Assembly: GCA_950097015.1 (NCBI GenBank) | Contig: CATNEN010000024.1 | Coordinates: 310,001 to 374,000 of the forward strand | Length of the DNA stretch: 64,000 nt | Direction: 5' to 3' | Source of the DNA: Macrostomum hystrix | Taxonomy: Eukaryota > Animalia > Platyhelminthes | Shown: one piece after another, positions 3,001 through 19,900 of the stretch | Numbering within the stretch: position 1 is the first letter of the stretch | Layout: every line of letters starts with the position of its first letter | Position numbers and translations under genes: made by a program | Notes under the pieces: model-generated | What the model was told of the DNA's origin: nothing | What the model saw: the letters and a program-made list of their open reading frames with translations, nothing else | Database searches by the model: none

Positions 3001-5673
3001 ATTATTATTAATTAAGGCATGGCAAAAATTTTGTTGATATGGGAAAGGCTTTAGACTTAAGGGCGTTCTGAGAGTTTAGATGTGAACTGGCTATGGTTTG
3101 TGGGGGTGCAGTTGGTGGAGGTATGAACTGGCTATGGTTTGTGGGGGTGCAGAGGGTGGAGGTGTGAACTGGCTATGGTTTGTGGGGGTGCAGTTAGTGG
3201 AGGTGTGAATTGGCTATGGTTTGTGGGGGTGCAGAGGGTGGAGGTGTGAACTGGCTATGGTTTGTGGGGGTGCAGTTGGTGGAGGTGTGAACTGGCTATA
3301 GTTTGTGGGGGTGCAGATGGTGGAGGTATGAACTGGCTATAGTTTGTGGGGGTGCAGAGGGTGGAGGTGTGAACTGGCTATGGTTTGTGGGGGTGCAGTT
3401 GGTGGAGGTATGAACTGGCTATGGTTTGTGGGGGTGCAGAGGGTGGAGGTGTGAACTGGCTATGGTTTGTGGGGGTGCAGTTGGTGGAGGTGTGAACTGG
3501 CTATAGTTTGTGGGGGTGCAGATGGTGGAGGTGTGAACTGGCTATGGTTTGTGGGGATGCAGTTGGTGGAGGTATGAACTGGCTATGGTTTGTGGGGGTG
3601 CAGTTGGTGGAGGTATGAACTGGCTATGGTTTGTGGGGGTGCAGTTGGTGGAGGTGTGAACTGGCTATGGTTTGTGGGGGTGCAGTTGGTGGAGGTTTTA
3701 TCTGGCTCTGGTTTGTGGGGGTGCAGAGGGTGAATGTGTATAGGAACACTATTTTATTGAGTTGAAATGATTGGATAAATTAGCGCAGAAGAGCTCACAG
3801 AAATGATGGCGGCACCATTTCAGTGTAGGTGAGCTGCAACAGGTTGTGCAGCGAGTCCAGATTCACAATGAAGGTGGCCAGGTCATCGCCGAGGGACCGA
3901 ATCATCGAGGCGAAGTTCATGCGCACAGCGTAGGTAAGAAAATATTCGCCGTAGAGTTCCAGTAGGGCCGGCACTTCTATGCCTGTATAATTAAGCAAGC
4001 AAACACAAGCGATTGCGGGCAAAGAAGAATTGAGTACCGTTCTTAGAGCTAGATGAGATATGTTGGGTCAACGGCTTAGCCAGACTCGTGATTAAATCTG
4101 CGAGTGAAAATGCAGTCAAAGCTGGCTTAGCAAAAGTTACAATAAAGTTTTAAAAGGGCAAGCTCAACTCTTGCTGGATAATTAAAATCTCTGATAGCAA
4201 AGTAGCTAAGCGTGCATTCCACTTTTAAATCAGATTAATCTGGTTATGCTTCCACTCTCAAAAGCCGAAGCACAGGTCGCGTTTTTCAAATGAAAATTCG
4301 AAGAGCGCGCAAATTAATGCAAATAACGTGCGCCATTTTTTTATCGCCCAAGCTTTGAAAACTAATCGAATACGAAAACATCCCCTCGACGGGCTAAAAA
4401 CAACTCAACAACAACACCCACCCCAGTAGACCACAATACCCACCCCAGTAGGCCACAACACCCACCCCAGTAGACCACAATACCCACCGCAGTAGACCAC
4501 AACACCCACCCCAGTAGACCACAATACCCACCCCAGTAGACCACAATACCCACCCCAGTAGGCCACAACACCCACCCCAGTAGACCACAATACCCACCCC
4601 AGTAGGCCACAACACCCACCCCAGTAGACCACAATACCCACCCCAGTAGACCACAACACCCAGCCCAGTAGACCACAACACCCACCCTAGTAGACCACAA
4701 CACCCACCCCAGTAGGCCAGCACCCACCCCAGTAGACCACAATACCCACCCCAGTAGACCACAATACCCACCCCAGTAGGCCACAACACCCACCCCAGTA
4801 GACCACAATACCCACCCCAGTAGACCACAACACCCAGCCCAGTAGACCACAACACCCACCCCAGTAGACCACAACACCCACCCCAGTAGGCCAGCACCCA
4901 CCCCAGTAGGCCACAGCACCCACCCCAGTAGACAAGCACCCACCCCAGTAGGCCAGCACCCACCCCAGTAGACAAGCACCCATCCCAGTAGGCCACAACA
5001 CCCACCCCAGTAGGCCATTAGCCACCCTAATGTGCCACAAGCCACTAACCACCCCAATATGCCACTAACCACCCCAATAGGCCACATAACCACCCCAATA
5101 TGCCACTAAAAGGTCATCGCAAAATTGATTGAGACCAAATCTATGAATGAGCTCACCAACAACCTTGGAGATGGTTTCAATCAGTATGAAAGTCTTCCTG
5201 TCCGGGTAGCCCTTCAGCAGTTGAAAATCTTCGTAGTCGTCAAGGTCAGCCAGAATCCTGCAGTTATCGAGACATATTCAACATATAAATATAGACCAAT
5301 TTTAGCCTAGAAACATATTTTTTTAAGTTATCACGTCATGTTGCAGCAAAAGTCGTCAACTCGTACAAGATTCGAGCCCAAGTCCGTTCGTCAAACTTCT
5401 CGAGCACCATCTGCTTGGCGCAAAAGTGAATATGGCCAAACTGAAATGCATTGATGGGCGGCTGAGTGGCGGGGGTTGTAAATGCGTTTGTCCCCAGGCG
5501 AGGCCACCATTCAAAAGTCAGGCCAGATGTACACACCTGTGTGTGTGTGTGCTCAGGGGTTAGCGGAATGGGCAGAATTGCCTCCTGGCTGTGGGTCTAC
5601 TGTCTCCAGCAAATAAGTTGCTTCATGAAATATTTGTGTTGTTTTCAAACACCGCGGACCAGTGTCTCACCAT
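1..5673 (-). CDS. Soluble (heme H-NOX) guanylate cyclase, beta2/GCY-35-like; 3' end runs off the window
   Basis: Exons read manually with GT-AG ends and consistent phases: 5673-5671 (ATG|GTGAGA), 5440-5367, 5257-5157, 3982-3799, 2624-2551, 1846-1349, 787-613, 230-<1. Translation gives an H-NOX domain (MFGHIHF..., DSLH with His at residue 105, YNSTR = YxSxR heme motif), HNOBA/PAS (GQMR..LYMSDIPLFDVTRELI), a coiled coil and the cyclase start VTVLFSDIVGFT. Confidence 0.93.
960..1255 (-). mobile_element. SINE family A copy (diverged) in sGC intron
   Basis: Same body (CTCACACAAGTGTGTACATCTGC, AAGCCTTCTCTCCGCGGCTG, GGAATCGA, CCGCTCTGCCA) and ATT tail as the 27332 copy. Confidence 0.82.
1925..2495. 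repeat. 33-bp minisatellite in sGC intron
   Basis: Unit AAGATCAAAAGCTTAGCCAAGGATACTGTCGGC. Confidence 0.95.
3082..3725. repeat. 41-bp minisatellite in sGC intron
   Basis: Unit GTGAACTGGCTATGGTTTGTGGGGGTGCAGTTGGTGGAGGT. Confidence 0.95.
4405..5105. repeat. 22-bp minisatellite in sGC intron
   Basis: Unit CACAACACCCACCCCAGTAGAC. Confidence 0.95.
5455..5610 (+). mobile_element. SINE family A fragment in sGC intron 1
   Basis: AAAGTCAGGCCAGATGTACACACCTGTGTG...CTCAGGGGTTAGCGGAATGGGCAGAATTGCCTCC matches the SINE A 3' half. Confidence 0.75.
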
Positions 5674-12889: not shown

Positions 12890-13288
12890 TTACTGGCCCT
12901 TGGGCGGCACAGTAGCGGCGCCCTTCTTGTTGACTAGGCTCTTGTGAATATGCGGAATGACACCGCCGCCAGCGATGGTGGCCTTGATAAGGGTGTCCAG
13001 TTCTTCGTCACCGCGAATAGCCAGCTGAAGATGGCGCGGCGTGATACGCTTAACTCGCAGATCCTTACTGGCGTTGCCAGCCAATTCCAGCACCTCGGCA
13101 GTCAGGTACTCCAGGATTGCGGCGCTGTATACTGCGGCTGTGGCGCCAACACGGCCGTGACTAGTTGTACGCGTTTTCAGATGACGATGAATACGACCAA
13201 CGGGGAATTGTAGGCCGGCGCGGGCCGACCTAGAGATGGCCTTCTGCTTGGCCTTGCCGCTGTCTTTGCCTGCTTTGCCACCGGCCAT
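12890..13288 (-). CDS. H2AZ: Histone variant H2A.Z/H2A.V (intronless CDS)
   Basis: [14 protein letters not shown]...[15 protein letters not shown]...[38 protein letters not shown] is near-canonical H2A.Z. A polypyrimidine/CAG acceptor lies about 25 nt upstream of the ATG. Confidence 0.98.
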
Positions 13289-14377
13289 ATTGAGCAAGAG
13301 AAGCTTTATTGCTGGAAAAATATGACAGGTAAGAAATTTGTTAATTGTCGAGAACGACTCACAACTAAAAAATCTTGAGAGAATCTACAATAGATCACAA
13401 TGTATCACCCATCACCAGCTTTAGATAAAGGGCAATATCGGTAGATGTGGCTCCCTAGTCCATGGACAGCTAAACTATGTACACTTGGCCCAACTGTGTA
13501 AGTTCCTAATATATCTTCCATCTTACACAAATCATTCAGCGCAATATATATAGATCTTGGCATGCAAATTTAGTAAATAAAAATATTAAAAGCACAAGTT
13601 AATGATCATTAAACGTATCAAAAATCAGTGCAATACAAAACGGCAGATCATCATCATTATTACTAATTTAAACTTTCGCAGCAAAACAATCAGATAAACG
13701 AAACAAAATAACAAAGAGCTAGTACAGTGTTTCACTTCTTATCCAGCAAAAAATACGAGCAAACAGCAAAACAGATGAAAGAAAACGACTCTACGAGTTC
13801 AGAAACAAACATTTTCATAGATAAGTATTCAATTCCTGTAGTAAATTTGAAATATAATTGTTGGTCTTTGTGGTGCGAAAATAGTTTTGAGAATATTAGG
13901 TAGAAAAATACACTCGAAAATTTTCATGATCGACTTTGTAAGTAATTTTTAGGAACACCGAATCACTGGAAATAGTATGCACGAAAAAATACGATGCTGA
14001 TGAAAGTGATTAATAGTCTGCGAGCCCGCCACCAAAAAGGACAAAAACAAACAAAAAAGTTTAATTGATTTAAAGCAACTGATTAAGTGATAGTATGCTT
14101 TCAAAAAGCGTCAGATGGATCACGATGAGTAAGAGTTATAAGTTGAAAAAAGTGAATTACAAATAGAATTAAAGAAATTTGGATTACAAAACATTTTCAC
14201 TGGAAAACAGCAGCCGCATAGTTTACTAAATAGTGCAGGAATTGGGCTTTAGCTGGGTGAAGGGAGAAATGCCTTAAACAGCTGATGCAATAACGAAAGC
14301 GTCCAGAAAGTTAATGCGATTGAAAATCCAGAATGAAAAATCTAGCTTAATGTGCATTGTTTAGTTTTTATAGGACC

Positions 14378-16540
14378 TCAATAATCCGCAGTGACTGCAT
14401 CCACTAGGCCGCCAGTATAAACTGTGATAGCTTTTAGCCTGCCATTGAGCAGGTTTTGTTCCACCTCCACAATGCCGGCGCGACATCCGGCCAGCAGGCG
14501 AGTTAGCTGGCCAAGGTCGGTATTGCGCGGCAGGTAAATACCTACGCTAGCGCAGTGACAAAGTGCTGCGCGAATGCAGTCGGCAACAGATCGATCGCCG
14601 GACAAGACTGGGGCGTCCAGGTCAAACACATCCTTGTCCAGATAGCTGGGACCGCCCCAGGGAGGCGACAAAAAGACTGCATCAGCGATTGGCCCAACAC
14701 GAGGAATGGCGTCAAAAAAGTCGGCGCACAAGAAGCTAACACGATTGAGCACATCGTAGACACCGGCATTGTGCTCAGCCATGGTTAGACGGCTAGGATC
14801 AATGTCGATTGCAACAACATGGCCGCAAAGCTGGGCAAACTGAATCACGTTACCACCGGCACCGCAGAATGCATCGATGAGAACGCCGGAGACCTTTAGA
14901 CGCTCAGCCTGATGACGGGCTATGCGTTGCGGCGTAACGCTGAACCAGGCCTCTCTGTCCAGCTGGATGCCTTGATCAAATCGATCGAAGAAGCGATAAC
15001 GCTGGTTCCAGTATTTATTCAGCGCTGGATCTTGCAAAGCCGTCTTGGCTTCGACAGCCTAAATGAAAATGGTTTAGAAAGCATGAGCTCTTTGATGATT
15101 TTTTCTCATTTTTTAAATTCTAATACTATAGTTTCCCGGAGTAATTCTGGCATCAATAATGTGCAGTTTAGCCTCGGGATTTACTTTACAGCATTAGCTG
15201 TTAACAAACAGATGCTACATTAATTATCATTACTATGACTCGATTTCTTTACGTTATATTTGTAAAATCTACATTCTGATATATTCCTTATTCTACATTC
15301 TACATATACTTTAGGAATAGTTTTTAATAAAAATCACCTCAGTCTCTTCGTCTCTCTCAATCGCCTGCCTGTCCTTGTACGACAAGCGTGAGGCAACTTG
15401 GCCAGCTGGCATCAGTAGATAGTGGCTAGAAGCTACATGATCCTGGTCTAGGTGTGCCTTGTAGACAAAGCCTAGCCGTTTAGCTAGCTTTAGGGCCGAC
15501 TGCTTAGCACCCTGACCAGGTCGGTAACGTGACACAAGTCTAAGAATCTCGACCCAGTAGGCTGTTTCAGTATTTCGCTGCCACTCCAGATCCCAATCCT
15601 GCACCGGTAGACCAGGTGGTACACTGGAGCACTGAGTTTCACGCAGAAGTTGAAGAAACTCCTCGTCTTCACGCAGGCTTAGCGGCATGCCAGACCAGCT
15701 TTCCTCTGTCATGTAGGCGCCAAAACGACGCACCCAAGCTAGCCAGACACAACGATCACGATTGATGCTCCATTGGCGTTCGAATTCGGCTGAAATCCAC
15801 TCATAATCGGGCCAATGTGGACCATAGTATACTATGTCATTATCTGTGCTCTCAGCGCATACATCCTTGTTGCTATTGTCTTTTTCTGCGTCATCGTCGA
15901 CTACAAATTCTGGAATTGACTTGCGTCTCTTTGGAGACTCATCACCAGCACTAATATTTCCATCTTCGATTTGAGCGACTGGCGCATCCAAATCCTGAAT
16001 TATGTGACGCTTTCCTGGCTTGCGGCCAGAGCCACCATTCTGACGCTGCTGTCTTTGGCGGACAGCAAAATTAGTTGGCAGACCCAAACGCGCCATCATC
16101 TGTTCCTCACTTTCTTGAATGACTCTAGCCTCGCAGGCATCGTCTTTCATTTTCGGGCTTGTTTCCTTAGCTTCTCTACTGATTTGACGAGTCTCCTCTT
16201 CGCCGTCGCAAGCAGCTCCAGAATCGGCTGAAATGCATAATTCAGCCAGCTTATCTGAAACAACATCATCAGACGCAATGGATGCTACTGTAGGCTGAAT
16301 CTCATTTTCATCTGGATTAAGTGAATCATCAATATTTTTGTTAACTTCTGCTTGATCTTCATTAATTTGCTTTGGCTTTTGAACTTTTCCATTGTAAATT
16401 TTTCCATCTGTAATATAAGCTCTAGTGAGAAAAGCACGCAGTGGATTATCTTCTTCAAACTGCTTATATGCTACAGCTAGATGAGCCAGCCGTTTCCAAT
16501 GACGCGCAGTGAAGCCTTGAAACACCTGATCACTAGACAT
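14378..16540 (-). CDS. TGS1: Trimethylguanosine synthase TGS1/PIMT (RNA cap hypermethylase)
   Basis: Exons 16540-15338 and 15058-14378 (phase 0). The C-terminal domain has KYWNQRYRFF, WFSVTP, DAFCGAGGNVIQFA and VFLSPPWGGP. Exon 1 carries TGS1 N-terminal-type motifs (MMARLGLPTNF; FERQWS..VWLAW; WDLEW). Confidence 0.95.
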
Positions 16541-16922
16541 CTTTCTGTTGGCTTTGCACAGTAGATAGTAGAAGATCAACGAGTGTTTCTAATTGGTCTA
16601 TATGATTATCAACACTTGCTGTGTCGTTTGCAAGAAGTTTAGCAGGTAGATCACGTAAACAGAACTGCTCGATATCACGCAGAACACTGCTGAAGGCTGC
16701 AGTATCAACAAATTCGCGTTTGTACAACAATCGTGCTCTTAGTGCACCAAGTCTCTCAGCACGCGGCTCAGAACTTTGAAACTCTTTGTCAAAAGAATTT
16801 TGTTGATCCAATTCGCTTTGGTTTGCAGCGCCGTCCTTAAAACCAAGTTTACCAATCTGATCCAATTGTTTCTGACAATCTTTTGAAACTAAAACCTGCT
16901 CAGCATCAGAGTCAGAATCCAT
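16533..16922 (-). CDS. YAE1: YAE1-like protein (Yae1_N/deca-GX3-type Fe-S maturation adaptor)
   Basis: 129-aa ORF. DSDSDAEQVLVSKDCQKQLDQIGKLGFKDG...QNSFDKEF...LGALRARL aligns by eye with human YAE1D1 as recalled (DEEADESLLAQREWQ..VKEGYRDG..QQGFNQGY..YGRLRGTL). Its stop overlaps the TGS1 start. Confidence 0.75.
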   Translation of the reverse strand: MDSDSDAEQVLVSKDCQKQLDQIGKLGFKDGAANQSELDQQNSFDKEFQSSEPRAERLGALRARLLYKREFVDTAAFSSVLRDIEQFCLRDLPAKLLANDTASVDNHIDQLETLVDLLLSTVQSQQKDV

Positions 16923-19900
16923 CCATTTAGGATGCAGCTAGAGCTGAAGATCAAATTCAATTAATGAAATTAGATCTGTAAGACAGCAAATCTTAAAATG
17001 ATTTCTATTAAAGGAAGAGAAAATGTTATAAGTTTGCTTGAATGTATGAAACAGACAATGGCAATGTTACACCTAAATTTTATTATGACGTCCCATAATG
17101 TTGGTTTGACCCAAAGGCAAATATGAGTAGAGTAAGGCCTAGGATCTGAAGCACAAAGTGAAACATTTTCAGCTACAAGTAAAATATAATAAGTTTGCCT
17201 GTATTTTTAGAGCCTTTCTTACCTTAACATTAGGTAGTAAAATAAATTTGGTGATAAAAAAAGTACAAAATTGCTGTCAACAAAAAAATGCAATTATGTG
17301 AAGCAATCAAGTCTAATTAAAGGTAATTTAGTTCTTTCAATTTCCAGTGTTTGATGCTGAAACATAGCCAACCAACAGGAAAATCGTTATATCTCTATGG
17401 TTTAGCAAAATAGGTATTGTAAACTGACATAGCGGACATGCTTATGTCCCTTATCCTGGTCACAAGCTTCTATGCAGCTAGGCAAACAGTCAAATTGTCA
17501 GTGGTTGCAAAACTAGTTTTATAAGTAATTAGCTAAATGTCTTGATGTTAGAAAGGATTCTAATCCTAAACATGGAATCCCTATTTCGCCAATTAAAATG
17601 CCAAGAACCTGGGTTATGCATTACTATTACATTGTAAAACATCAAATAAAATATACAAATTATAAGCCTTGTGTACAAAAAGAATTAAGTAAAAATTCAC
17701 AATAAATGTATTAAAATTTTTTGATAAAAGAGAAATTGAAAGCACTAGCCATTGTAAATATTTAACTAGCAAACTGTTACTTTAGTGATCTGCATTAACT
17801 AAAATGACGACTAACAAACTCTACTCTAGTCCATTTATTGTAAATGCACAAGCTACCACATGATATATGACTGAATTCCTATGGAAATTGGATATGATTA
17901 ATAAACAGAAACTACAAAATGAACTTCATTACAATCAACAAATTACATTTTTTTATTTTTACAAATTATATTAGCTTGATAATGACATTTCCCTGTGCTC
18001 TTAAAACAAAAAAAATTTCTACAATTAAGTGCAACTCATTAAACATAGGTAAGCCAGATTAAAAACCCTTGTCAACATTAACCCACCTAGAATCCCTACT
18101 CATTATTCTAAAAACATAGACCTTGCTTGGCTTCTAAAAATGTAATCATAAACACAAAAAATAATAAGATCTGTCTTTTCTTAGTATTGCTTATATTATT
18201 TTGATCATTTTATATTAATAACTATTTTAAATTAAACTTTTGTAATTTTTAAAATTGCTTGTCCAATATGCAAATTTTTTGACAAATCATATCTACTATG
18301 CACAATAGAATAAACATTAGAAGAATTGAGGTCTGACAGTAGGCAAACTTAACTGAAAGCATAGGCAAAACACACTTTCTCTTAATTTTAAGAGGCTTCC
18401 TTTGCAACCAACAAAAATCTAGATAATTATGCATGGTCCTACATAAAAACTATGCTTTCAATTGGTCCAAGTTAAAAAAATTGCACTAGACATTAAACAT
18501 CTTAGACAATTAGTCTAACAGAATATTCTAGCAAGTTAATATGTATATAAGGCTATAAGCAAAACAATTTTGAGCATGAACCATATAGTTATGTCAGAAT
18601 AATAACTACAGATGTGTGGATGCATGTATGAATCAAGGAAGTTGAGTCACTTCAACTTGAAGTTAAATATGGAATTAAATATTTTTGACTAAAAATGTTT
18701 GAGAACACATTAAAATGGTAAAATTGTAAAAAAATCAGTATTTATTCATTTTGTTGTTTTTTAATTAGCTAATTACCAGAGTGCACCATAAACTAATTTG
18801 TCATTTAAATGCTCAAAAAAATTATTGCCACTAAAATGGACTGAAATCACACTTAAACATATATTTTAGTCACTTAAACATTACCTAATTAATGCTAAAT
18901 AGCATCTATGAGCTAAGTGTTAAATTGGTTTAATCACTGAGGTTTAGGAAAAAAACATTAAAAAGCTTAATCAAAAACTCTCAAAGCTCTTGATTAATCG
19001 AATTGAATGTGTCTGAATATTGAATTTCTTAGAAAGCATATGGGAAAATTGATATTTTGTTATAAACATGACTTGTTTAAAATGAATGAATTCATATTAT
19101 TTTATACTATATAAAACTTTGTTAATGTTTCTGCCATTTATATTACAAAAAAGTATAAATAATACATCAGAGTTAGCAAAAGAAACTTGACTTTTGCGGT
19201 TTGATACAAAGTTTGTATACATTACTCAGAAGTGTTTTTTCATTCTTTATAAAACATACAAAGATAAATACTAAAATTTCAAAAAAGAGTAGAAAGTATT
19301 GCTATACAGTTGAGATCATAGGTAACACTCTTGGGAAAGCCTAAACTTAGAAATATATACATATAATTAAGTAATTGGTCAGAATAACTAAATAGGCTAC
19401 CTAGGCTAGTTATTGTATTACAGATAATAACTAAATATGATACTAAGAAATTCTTTGAAATATATAAAATATATTCTCAGAGGCTAATTCAAAGATAATA
19501 TTGAAATTACTTAGACAAACCTCTAAAATACCCCTATAACAACTTTTGTAAGATATTAAAAAGTAGAACTCACACAACTTTGGTGGCATTATGAAAATAA
19601 AGTTAGAATAGTAATTAATCCTACAAAAACTTTGGTGACATATTCTAGAGTAATAATTTAAGAAGCATTAGGACAACTCTGGTGGCAATATTGGCATAAG
19701 GACTTTACTAAAAAGTTAGGTCTATGACATTAATTTGAGTAAATAAAGTTACCAAAATCTATTTGTTTAGCAAAGATGGGCATTTGCTTGTATGGCTTGT
19801 ATATATATATGTTCATAATGTGGTGGCCTATTATAATAAACTGCTACGCCTATAAAGATAAGGTGGGCATTTTTGACATGGTATATACAAAGCTGACAAT

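What the first reader, a model, noticed from the sequence alone, without database searches (positions are those of the whole stretch)
16533..16978. YAE1 and TGS1 ORFs overlap (ATGTCTAG) with a leaky-scanning signature: candidate bicistronic mRNA
Seen (sense strand): ...CAG AAA GAT GTC TAG ends YAE1 (stop 16535-16533), and the +1 frame ATG TCT AGT starts TGS1 at 16540, an 8-nt overlap. In the 381 nt between the two start codons there is only one other ATG in any frame (16906, closing after 5 codons), versus several expected by chance. All three upstream ATGs (16926, 16922, 16906) have a pyrimidine at -3, whereas the TGS1 ATG has A at -3. An alternative or additional mechanism is visible: a pyrimidine-rich stretch ending CCAACAG|AAAGATG gives a possible 3' acceptor at 16545 inside the YAE1 CDS, so YAE1 coding DNA could double as an intron/outron for TGS1. 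Established (recalled): Drosophila Tgs1/DTL is the downstream cistron of a bicistronic mRNA with moi; the calicivirus RHDV stop/start is AUGUCUGA. No UGGGA TURBS motif is seen upstream. Inference: one transcript couples an Fe-S/ABCE1 maturation adaptor with the TMG cap methylase that SL/snRNAs need.
Basis: partly seen in the sequence, partly recalled or inferred. Interest (0 to 1): 0.8.

Follow-up and report, generated by a model that had tools for sequence, protein, structure and literature searches.

The report
Two-gene YAE1-like/TGS1 flatworm mRNA
In Macrostomum flatworms, one spliced-leader-capped mRNA appears to carry two overlapping genes, a small YAE1-like protein followed by the cap-methylating enzyme TGS1, and the first gene lacks AUG codons in three species, which suggests that ribosomes scan through it to reach TGS1.

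Summary
On the minus strand, a 129-codon ORF (16922-16533) ends 8 nt after the TGS1 start (16540, ATGTCTAG). The only ATGs upstream of TGS1 are 16926, 16922 and 16906, each with a pyrimidine at -3. TGS1 has A at -3.

RNA contigs from two runs join the Macrostomum spliced leader at acceptor 16945-44. They run unbroken through both ORFs, lack the 279-nt intron, and continue into the 3' UTR.

Two M. lignano copies and a third species' transcript contig show the same layout: an 8-11 nt overlap, the same three upstream AUGs, and about 366 AUG-free nt. Synonymous sites between the species are saturated. ORF-A is under purifying selection (pN 0.16, pS 0.74). None of its 12 possible synonymous ATG sites is used, against 62 of 126 in TGS1.

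No spliced-leader junction, YTNCAG acceptor motif or TURBS motif lies near the TGS1 start.

"YAE1" is only partly verified. Pfam and HMMER find nothing, but protein-language-model neighbours are all Yae1_N.

Best reading: a conserved dicistronic mRNA in which TGS1 is reached by leaky scanning or by reinitiation after mini-uORFs. This is a new member of a known kind, like Drosophila moi-Tgs1 and the green-algal bicistrons. It has not been shown on single molecules.

The parts
16944..16945 (-). AG of the spliced-leader trans-splice acceptor (tcttcAG|CTCTAG). The mature mRNA starts at 16943 behind the 35-nt leader.
   Evidence: the X5 and X6 contigs carry 20 non-genomic nt, GAAGACTCAATTTATTGCAT (sense), abutting 16944. 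With the following G this equals the last 21 nt of the M. lignano leader given in PMC8629364. The site fits the YTNCAG motif.
16938..16943 (-). CTC TAG. Together with the AUG that ends the leader it forms a 2-codon mini-ORF (AUG CUC UAG).
   Evidence: M. lignano has the equivalent AUG CUG UAA.
16912..16926 (-). Mini-uORF 1: ATG GAT GGA TTC TGA (MDGF*). It is out of frame with the ORF-A start, overlaps it, and has -3 T.
   Evidence: It is identical in M. lignano and in L002.
16533..16922 (-). ORF-A, 129 aa plus stop, a YAE1-like protein. Its start has -3 T and +4 G, and it has no internal Met.
   Evidence: It is 72% and 64% identical to the M. lignano and L002 orthologues. pN is 0.156 against pS 0.742. 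All nearest Atlas clusters are Yae1_N. There is no Pfam or HMMER hit.
16889..16906 (-). Mini-ORF 3: ATG CTG AGC AGG TTT TAG (MLSRF*), with -3 C.
   Evidence: It is a 5-codon ORF in all three species.
16541..16903 (-). AUG-free stretch with no ATG in any frame, inside ORF-A.
   Evidence: The gap is the same size in the other species, 369 nt. None of 12 potential synonymous ATG sites is realised, against 62 of 126 in TGS1.
16533..16540 (-). Start/stop overlap ATGTCTAG. The TGS1 AUG (-3 A) lies 5 nt before the ORF-A UAG.
   Evidence: M. lignano has ATGTTTAG (8 nt) and L002 has ATGCCAAGTAA (11 nt).
15338..16540 (-). TGS1 exon 1 (401 codons).
   Evidence: The donor is GAG|GTGATT. It is 67% identical to M. 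lignano TGS1 P0003.
15059..15337 (-). Intron of 279 nt, GT..AG.
   Evidence: it is skipped in contigs of X5, X6 and X2.
14378..15058 (-). TGS1 exon 2 (226 codons plus TGA), the cap guanine-N2 methyltransferase domain.
   Evidence: PF09445, E=1.1e-39; TGS1 of many animals, E about 1e-60.
13702..14377 (-). 3' UTR. Contigs end at 13812 (X5) and 13702 (X6). AATAAA lies at 14065.

Best explanation
The locus makes a mature dicistronic mRNA that is conserved across the genus Macrostomum. The pre-mRNA receives the 35-nt spliced leader at acceptor 16945-44. Its one intron (15337-15059) is removed, and it is polyadenylated about 600 nt after the TGS1 stop. The mRNA encodes a 129-aa YAE1-like protein and then, in the +1 frame and overlapping by 8 nt, the 627-aa trimethylguanosine synthase TGS1. 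Every AUG before TGS1 has a pyrimidine at -3. These are the leader's own AUG, 16926, the ORF-A start 16922, and 16906. Three of the four open ORFs of only 2-5 codons. Some 43S complexes therefore pass them by leaky scanning, or resume scanning after a mini-uORF. They then cross a 366-nt stretch kept free of AUGs and initiate at the first good AUG (16540, A at -3) to make TGS1. The ribosomes that start at 16922 make the YAE1-like protein. Shown here: the trans-splice junction, the intron removal, RNA contigs that are continuous over both ORFs, purifying selection on both ORFs, and conservation of the overlap, the AUG contexts and the AUG desert. Inferred: that a single molecule carries both ORFs, that TGS1 is translated from that molecule, and that scanning is the mechanism.
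For:: X5 (2862 nt) and X6 (2972 nt) each give one contig running from leader plus 16944 to 15337, then from 15057 to 13812 or 13702. X1 contig 3 (16437-16700) spans the overlap. The only loose end in four runs is the leader at 16944. One search gives the leader sequence; two M. lignano copies and the independent transcript contig L002 (SRR30276804) have the same ORF order, an 8- or 11-nt overlap, three upstream AUGs with -3 pyrimidines, a TGS1 AUG with -3 G or A, and a 369-nt AUG-free gap. ORF-A has pN 0.156 and pS 0.742 (saturated), so the shared features are not simply inherited identity; none of 12 potential synonymous ATG sites is used in ORF-A, against 62 of 126 in TGS1 (Fisher P=5e-4, or P=4e-3 when shared columns are collapsed). 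There is no internal Met in any of the three species. Codon-shuffle P(0 ATG) is 0.005, 0.006 and 0.015; synonymous sites are free in the last 30 codons (1 of 13 identical) and conserved in the first 10 (4 of 7). This places the constraint on the AUG cluster and not on the stop/start region. There is no TGGGA and no YTNCAG within 80 nt of the TGS1 AUG. TGS1 exon 1 has no A[AT]TAAA in the window or in M. lignano, so no obvious separate 3' end for ORF-A; the same design rules were shown experimentally for green-algal bicistrons, namely a weak ORF1 Kozak sequence, no AUGs before ORF2, and sometimes overlapping stop and start.
Against: All RNA evidence comes from de Bruijn contigs. Contigs can merge overlapping transcripts and drop rare variants, so no single molecule, read start or poly(A) site was seen. 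No ribosome or protein data exist. In the window species alone, given its amino-acid sequence, the AUG count is not significantly low (synonymous resampling P=0.24). The argument therefore depends on three related species. An AG lies 12-14 nt before the TGS1 AUG in all three species, behind a T-rich tract. That could be a weak internal acceptor. Four upstream AUGs, two of them with G at +4, would let only a minority of ribosomes through.
Confidence: 0.6

Rival explanations
1. The locus is an operon-like precursor with alternative processing. The full-length RNA serves only ORF-A, or is a precursor. Functional TGS1 mRNA is made by trans-splicing the leader to a weak acceptor inside the end of ORF-A, at the reader's 16545 or at the AG 12-14 nt before the AUG. 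ORF-A coding sequence would then act as an outron.
For: About 15% of M. lignano genes are in operons resolved by the spliced leader. A T-rich tract followed by an AG lies at -12 to -14 in all three species, and further AGs lie at -1 to -8. In X2, contigs cover TGS1 up to 16404 but none covers ORF-A, at low depth.
Against: No leader junction or loose end appears anywhere except 16944 in four runs, and the contigs do not break at the overlap. L002 is also unbroken. None of the candidate sites fits YTNCAG, whereas the real acceptor does. Synonymous sites there are unconstrained. This model does not explain the conserved AUG desert or the weak upstream contexts.
Confidence: 0.2
2. The mRNA is dicistronic, but TGS1 is made by termination-reinitiation. 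Ribosomes finishing ORF-A at UAG 16535-33 slip back 5 nt and restart at AUG 16540, as at calicivirus or influenza B stop/start overlaps.
For: The stop/start overlap is kept in all three species (8, 8 and 11 nt) in the same relative frame.
Against: There is no UGGGA (TURBS motif 1) in ORF-A of any species, and there is no synonymous-site conservation in the 90 nt before the restart site. Reinitiation after a 129-codon ORF without such an element is inefficient, by established knowledge of reinitiation. This mechanism needs neither an AUG desert nor weak upstream contexts, yet both are conserved.
Confidence: 0.12
3. ORF-A is not an independent gene. It would be either a regulatory uORF whose peptide is irrelevant, or the N-terminal part of a YAE1-TGS1 fusion made by +1 frameshifting, or the product of an assembly frameshift.
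For: ORF-A has no Pfam or HMMER relatives outside Macrostomum. The TGS1 frame is open for 13 codons upstream of its AUG.
Against: ORF-A shows strong purifying selection on its amino-acid sequence (pN/pS about 0.2 or less). The frame offset is identical in a genome window, two M. lignano genomic copies and RNA contigs of several runs. TGS1 conservation begins at its Met, and the upstream TGS1-frame peptide is not conserved. The Yae1_N embedding neighbours are specific.
Confidence: 0.04

Closest known systems
Drosophila melanogaster moi-Tgs1 (CG31241) bicistronic locus
   Same: A single transcript carries a small upstream ORF (Moi) and then TGS1 as the second cistron. Both proteins are functional and can be rescued separately (PMC7605716, PMC7289441).
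   Different: Moi is described as a fast-evolving telomere-capping protein, not as YAE1. No paper in the library links the two. The Drosophila mRNA is not trans-spliced. The Moi sequence could not be fetched here, so homology to ORF-A is untested. TGS1 loci of Oikopleura and Tigriopus and two other transcript contigs have no YAE1-like upstream ORF. The linkage is therefore not general.
Green-algal nuclear bicistronic mRNAs translated by leaky scanning (PMC11291117)
   Same: They share a weak ORF1 start context, few or no AUGs before ORF2, a better ORF2 context, and at some loci overlapping ORF1 stop and ORF2 start. These are the same sequence rules as seen here.
   Different: The lineage and the gene pairs differ. 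The mechanism was shown there by mutagenesis and ribosome profiling, but here it is only inferred from sequence. Here the mRNA is spliced-leader capped and has extra mini-uORFs, including the leader's own AUG.
Spliced-leader-resolved operons of Macrostomum, nematodes and Ciona
   Same: The transcript is leader trans-spliced at its 5' end, and gene pairs are co-transcribed.
   Different: Operon cistrons are separated by about 100 nt, and each downstream gene gets its own leader. Here the ORFs overlap by 8 nt and no internal leader junction or YTNCAG motif was found.
Viral termination-reinitiation (calicivirus TURBS, influenza B M1/BM2)
   Same: The stop and start codons overlap, with the AUG a few nucleotides before the stop.
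   Different: There is no TURBS motif 1 and no conserved upstream RNA. An AUG desert is not a feature of those systems.
YAE1 (Yae1/YAE1D1), the LTO1 partner that delivers ABCE1/Rli1 to the cytosolic Fe-S assembly machinery
   Same: All 40 and 30 nearest ESM-Atlas clusters carry Yae1_N, with scores of 0.95-0.96. The best non-Yae1 cluster scores 0.75. The protein is small and helical and has a conserved KLG[FY]K[DE]G...LGAL core.
   Different: There is no Pfam PF09811 hit even at E<=10. A profile search of 1.8 billion representatives finds no HMMER relative outside Macrostomum. The glycine repeat is largely degenerate.

Membership tests
TGS1 (trimethylguanosine synthase) | RNA cap guanine-N2 methyltransferase domain (Pfam PF09445) | tested here: met
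   E=1.1e-39, 136 bits, in exon 2. TGS1 of many animals at E about 1e-60.
YAE1 (Yae1_N, PF09811) | Match to the Pfam Yae1_N profile at or near the gathering score | tested here: not met
   no PF09811 hit at E<=10 for the window, M. lignano or L002 proteins or for their core segments.
YAE1 (Yae1_N, PF09811) | Sequence relatives that are annotated YAE1 proteins | tested here: not met
   only the M. lignano orthologue and one weak repetitive hit, in 5.8 billion (word search) and 1.8 billion (HMMER profile) proteins.
YAE1 (Yae1_N, PF09811) | Protein-language-model neighbourhood made up of YAE1 clusters | tested here: met
   40 of 40 hits, top score 0.95, 216 of 256 features shared. M. lignano orthologue, 30 of 30 hits, top 0.96; without PF09811 the best score is 0.75.
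YAE1 (Yae1_N, PF09811) | Deca-GX3 glycine repeat that pairs with LTO1 | tested here: inconclusive
   with period 4, only G27, G31 and G59 are Gly. The other positions are Q, D, S, E, S, A and A. The canonical motif is recalled from memory, not from a tool.
YAE1 (Yae1_N, PF09811) | Binds LTO1 and recruits ABCE1 | not testable with these tools
   This needs biochemistry or co-folding with the Macrostomum LTO1, which was not available.
Eukaryotic dicistronic mRNA read by leaky scanning | Both ORFs present on processed (capped or leader-capped, spliced) RNA | tested here: met
   leader-capped, spliced contigs of X5 and X6 span both ORFs. L002 does the same. This is assembly-level evidence only, and no single molecules were seen.
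Eukaryotic dicistronic mRNA read by leaky scanning | Weak context at upstream AUGs and a better context at the downstream AUG | tested here: met
   -3 is T, T and C upstream, against A, G and A at TGS1, in three species.
Eukaryotic dicistronic mRNA read by leaky scanning | Depletion of AUGs between the two starts, maintained by selection | tested here: met
   the gaps are 366-369 nt, 0 of 12 potential sites are used against 62 of 126, and codon-shuffle P is 0.005-0.015 per species.
Eukaryotic dicistronic mRNA read by leaky scanning | Downstream ORF output falls when the upstream start is strengthened, and ribosomes occupy both frames | not testable with these tools
   This needs reporters and ribosome profiling.
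Spliced-leader-resolved operon | Own leader acceptor and an intercistronic spacer before the downstream gene | tested here: not met
   no junction other than 16944; no YTNCAG within 80 nt of the TGS1 AUG. The spacer is -8 nt.
Termination-reinitiation (TURBS type) | Motif 1 (UGGGA) and conserved RNA upstream of the stop/start | tested here: not met
   no TGGGA in any species, and 1 of 13 synonymous codons conserved in the last 30 codons.

The most novel reading that the evidence does not exclude
The YAE1-TGS1 dicistron may be ancient and not a Macrostomum invention, with the Drosophila moi-Tgs1 bicistron as its descendant. Moi, now known as a fast-evolving telomere-capping protein, would then be a diverged YAE1. 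On this reading TGS1 has been a scanning-dependent second cistron since before flatworms and insects split. My evidence does not exclude this, because the Moi sequence could not be fetched or compared. The absence of the linkage in the tunicate, the copepod and two unidentified transcript contigs argues for independent origins.
Probability: 0.1. Interest if true: 0.85.

Novelty: new member of a known kind. Interest (0 to 1): 0.55.

Why it matters
Natural dicistronic mRNAs in animals are few, and their translation rules are mostly inferred case by case. This one has clean, conserved sequence rules: an AUG desert, weak upstream starts, mini-uORFs and a stop/start overlap. It occurs in a flatworm genus where transgenesis exists, so the mechanism can be tested directly. 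It also exposes an annotation trap. M. lignano gene models carry only one CDS per transcript, so one genomic copy is annotated as the small ORF and the other as TGS1. TGS1 makes the trimethylguanosine cap of spliced-leader RNA, so its own leader-capped mRNA depends on its product. TGS1 is also the second cistron in Drosophila, which raises the question of whether low, scanning-limited TGS1 output is selected repeatedly.

Tried and rejected
1. Pfam scans of ORF-A from the window, M. lignano and L002, and of their core segments, at E<=10 gave no Yae1_N hit.
2. A word-index search and a full HMMER profile search for ORF-A relatives found only the M. lignano orthologue.
3. A PDB sequence search gave only a chance bacterioferritin hit.
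4. An AF2 model of ORF-A (pLDDT 70.6, five helices) gave only generic helical bundles in the Atlas fold search. The Atlas's own structure search did the same.
5. An exact-product lookup of the window's ORF-A in public assemblies found nothing on record.
6. I looked for the linkage outside Macrostomum. Two Logan TGS1 transcript contigs (L004, L005) and the Oikopleura and Tigriopus loci have no YAE1-like ORF or PF09811 gene next to TGS1. The Daphnia lookup failed.
7. Drosophila Tgs1 and moi could not be fetched, because Tgs1 was not among the 120 listed hits and the searches were exhausted. Raffa 2009 and Komonyi 2005 are not held in the library.
8. A frameshift fusion, an assembly error and a non-coding uORF were considered and rejected (see the rival explanations).
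10. Scanning the window for other overlapping ORF pairs found this pair only.

Full report
**What is in the sequence**

All features lie on the minus strand. A 129-codon ORF, here called ORF-A, runs from ATG 16922 to TAG 16535-16533. A second ORF starts at ATG 16540, so the two share the 8 nt ATGTCTAG.

The second ORF continues to a GT donor at 15337, and a 279-nt intron follows. A second exon (15058-14378) carries the cap guanine-N2 methyltransferase domain (PF09445, E=1.1e-39). The spliced product is 627 aa. It matches TGS1 of M. lignano (67% identity over exon 1) and of animals generally.

Upstream of the TGS1 ATG the only ATGs are 16926 (MDGF*, 4 codons), 16922 (ORF-A) and 16906 (MLSRF*, 5 codons). 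Their -3 bases are T, T and C. The TGS1 ATG has A at -3.

**RNA evidence**

Four public runs hold this stretch. In runs X5 and X6, one contig each (2862 and 2972 nt) covers 16944 to 15337, skips 15337-15059, and continues to 13812 or 13702.

At the 16944 end both contigs carry 20 extra nucleotides, GAAGACTCAATTTATTGCAT. Together with the next G, these are the last 21 nt of the published 35-nt Macrostomum lignano spliced leader (PMC8629364). These runs are therefore RNA, the organism is a Macrostomum, and the acceptor is tcttcAG|CTC at 16945-44. That site fits the published YTNCAG trans-splice motif.

X2 shows the same intron removal. An X1 contig (16437-16700) spans the stop/start overlap. The leader at 16944 is the only loose end reported in any of the four runs, so no leader junction was seen near 16545.

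All of this is contig-level evidence. It shows that processed RNA covers both ORFs without a break. It does not prove that one molecule carries both.

**Conservation**

ORF-A has one database relative, M. lignano BOX15_Mlig019700g1 (72% identity). The window therefore comes from a different Macrostomum species.

The M. lignano locus L001, a second copy L003, and an independent Logan transcript contig from a third species (L002, SRR30276804) all show ORF-A followed directly by TGS1. L002's TGS1 is 51% identical in the N-terminal part. The overlaps are ATGTTTAG (8 nt) in M. lignano and ATGCCAAGTAA (11 nt) in L002, in the same relative frame.

The ATG map is the same in all three species. Each has a 4-codon MDGF* uORF, the ORF-A start 4 nt later, a 5-codon ORF 16 nt after that, and then no ATG for 366-369 nt until TGS1. 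The -3 bases are pyrimidines at the three upstream ATGs and A, G and A at TGS1.

After trans-splicing, the leader's own terminal AUG reads AUG CUC UAG in the window and AUG CUG UAA in M. lignano, a 2-codon ORF in each.

**Is ORF-A a gene, and is the AUG desert selected?**

Between the window and M. lignano, ORF-A has pN 0.156 and pS 0.742. Synonymous sites are saturated while the protein is conserved. ORF-A is therefore translated and under purifying selection, at least as strongly as TGS1 exon 1 (pN 0.184, pS 0.684).

Because synonymous sites are saturated, the shared absence of ATGs is not inherited identity. In the three ORF-A sequences there are 12 codon pairs where a synonymous choice would create an out-of-frame ATG. 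This count sets aside the conserved codon-6 ATG and the TGS1 start itself. None of the 12 is used. In the three TGS1 coding sequences, 62 of 126 such sites are used (Fisher P=5e-4, or P=4e-3 after collapsing shared columns).

ORF-A has no internal Met in any species. It also has fewer potential ATG sites per 100 aa (2.3-5.3, against 8.4-9.2 in TGS1). Codon shuffles of the core give P(no ATG) of 0.005, 0.006 and 0.015.

For the window alone the signal is weaker. Synonymous resampling given its amino-acid sequence gives P=0.24, and about 5% of all 366-nt windows in the 64 kb are ATG-free. The case rests on the comparison between species.

**Choosing between mechanisms**

Synonymous codons are conserved in the first ten codons of ORF-A (4 of 7 identical in all three species), where the AUG cluster and mini-uORFs lie. 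They are free in the last thirty codons (1 of 13). No conserved RNA element precedes the stop/start, and no TGGGA (TURBS motif 1) occurs in any species. This argues against virus-like termination-reinitiation.

No YTNCAG motif lies within 80 nt of the TGS1 AUG. An AG does lie at -12 to -14 behind a T-rich tract in all three species, so a weak internal acceptor cannot be excluded.

TGS1 exon 1 has no A[AT]TAAA in the window or in M. lignano. That gives no obvious 3' end for a separate ORF-A mRNA.

The AUG desert and the weak upstream contexts are needed only if ribosomes scan from the 5' end to the TGS1 AUG. Two routes fit this. One is leaky scanning past the upstream AUGs. The other is resumed scanning after the 2-, 4- or 5-codon mini-ORFs. 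The stop of the MDGF uORF lies only 5 nt before ATG 16906, which is too close for re-acquisition of initiator tRNA by established rules, so the next usable AUG is TGS1.

I put about 0.75 on a true dicistronic mRNA and about 0.6 on scanning as the route to TGS1.

**Identity of ORF-A**

Alignment-based methods fail. There is no Pfam hit at E<=10. The profile search of 1.8 billion representatives finds no relative beyond Macrostomum, and the PDB search finds nothing. The AF2 model is a five-helix protein that matches only generic bundles.

The ESM-Atlas feature search gives a different answer. It returns only Yae1_N (PF09811) clusters, 40 of 40 with a top score of 0.95 for the window protein and 30 of 30 with a top of 0.96 for the M. 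lignano orthologue. Once PF09811 clusters are excluded the best score is 0.75.

The conserved core KLG[FY]K[DE]G...DQQ..FD..F..SEP.AERLGAL.ARLL looks like a degenerate version of the YAE1 GX3 repeat as I recall it. I call ORF-A "YAE1-like", with roughly 0.75-0.8 probability of being the orthologue. Membership is not proven.

**Comparison with known systems**

Drosophila Tgs1 is the second ORF of a single transcript, behind moi (PMC7605716, PMC7289441). Green-algal bicistrons follow the same design rules and were shown experimentally to use leaky scanning (PMC11291117).

No paper in the library links YAE1 with TGS1, YAE1 with Moi, or Macrostomum with bicistronic mRNAs.

The linkage is not general. 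Oikopleura and Tigriopus TGS1 loci and two other TGS1 transcript contigs lack it. This is therefore a new member of a known kind. It is conserved at least within Macrostomum, and there is an untested possibility of a deeper link to moi-Tgs1.

**Limits**

The single calls allowed for run finding and for read laying were both used. Raw reads, long reads, read starts and poly(A) ends were not available.

Noticed in passing
L001:5978-5987 versus L003:3586-3596: One M. lignano genomic copy reads cTTATTGCATGctg where the other reads cTTATCTTCAGctg. The six bases of the trans-splice acceptor are replaced by the last six bases of the spliced leader. This is either an RNA-read polishing artefact in assembly GCA_002269645.1 or a cDNA-mediated conversion. 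If it is real, that copy has lost its acceptor.
   Followed up: partly
window 12890-13297 (-): A histone H2A.Z-like ORF ([17 protein letters not shown]...) lies about 400-500 nt downstream of the TGS1 3' UTR on the same strand. M. lignano has a Histone/H2A_C gene in the same position in both copies (L001 10765-11187, L003 8081-8503). The synteny is conserved, and the genes may form a spliced-leader operon.
   Followed up: partly
window 55119 and 55945 (-): Exact copies of the last 14 nt of the spliced leader occur here.
   Followed up: no
window 13935 and 14059-14159: The X6 contig differs from the window by a 12-nt deletion and nine substitutions clustered in the TGS1 3' UTR, whereas X5 shows only the deletion. 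This is an allele or a recent paralogue in the sequenced population.
   Followed up: no
window 17084 (-): An AATAAA lies 140 nt upstream of the leader acceptor, the spacing typical of an upstream operon gene. However, there is no minus-strand ORF of 70 aa or more for about 6 kb upstream, and no RNA contig in 16980-18800.
   Followed up: partly
L001 and L003 (M. lignano annotation): NCBI gene models annotate only ORF-A on one copy (BOX15_Mlig019700g1, 'partial') and only TGS1 on the other (BOX15_Mlig033998g6). This is what one-CDS-per-transcript pipelines do with a dicistronic mRNA, so each copy appears to lack one of the two genes.
   Followed up: partly
window 16541-16553 (-), L003 about 3987-4000, L002 about 392-405: An AG sits 12-14 nt before the TGS1 AUG in all three species. 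It is formed by the only invariant residue of the ORF-A tail (Gln123, CAA or CAG, followed by A) and lies behind a T-rich Leu/Phe-codon tract. It could be a weak internal 3' splice site.
   Followed up: partly
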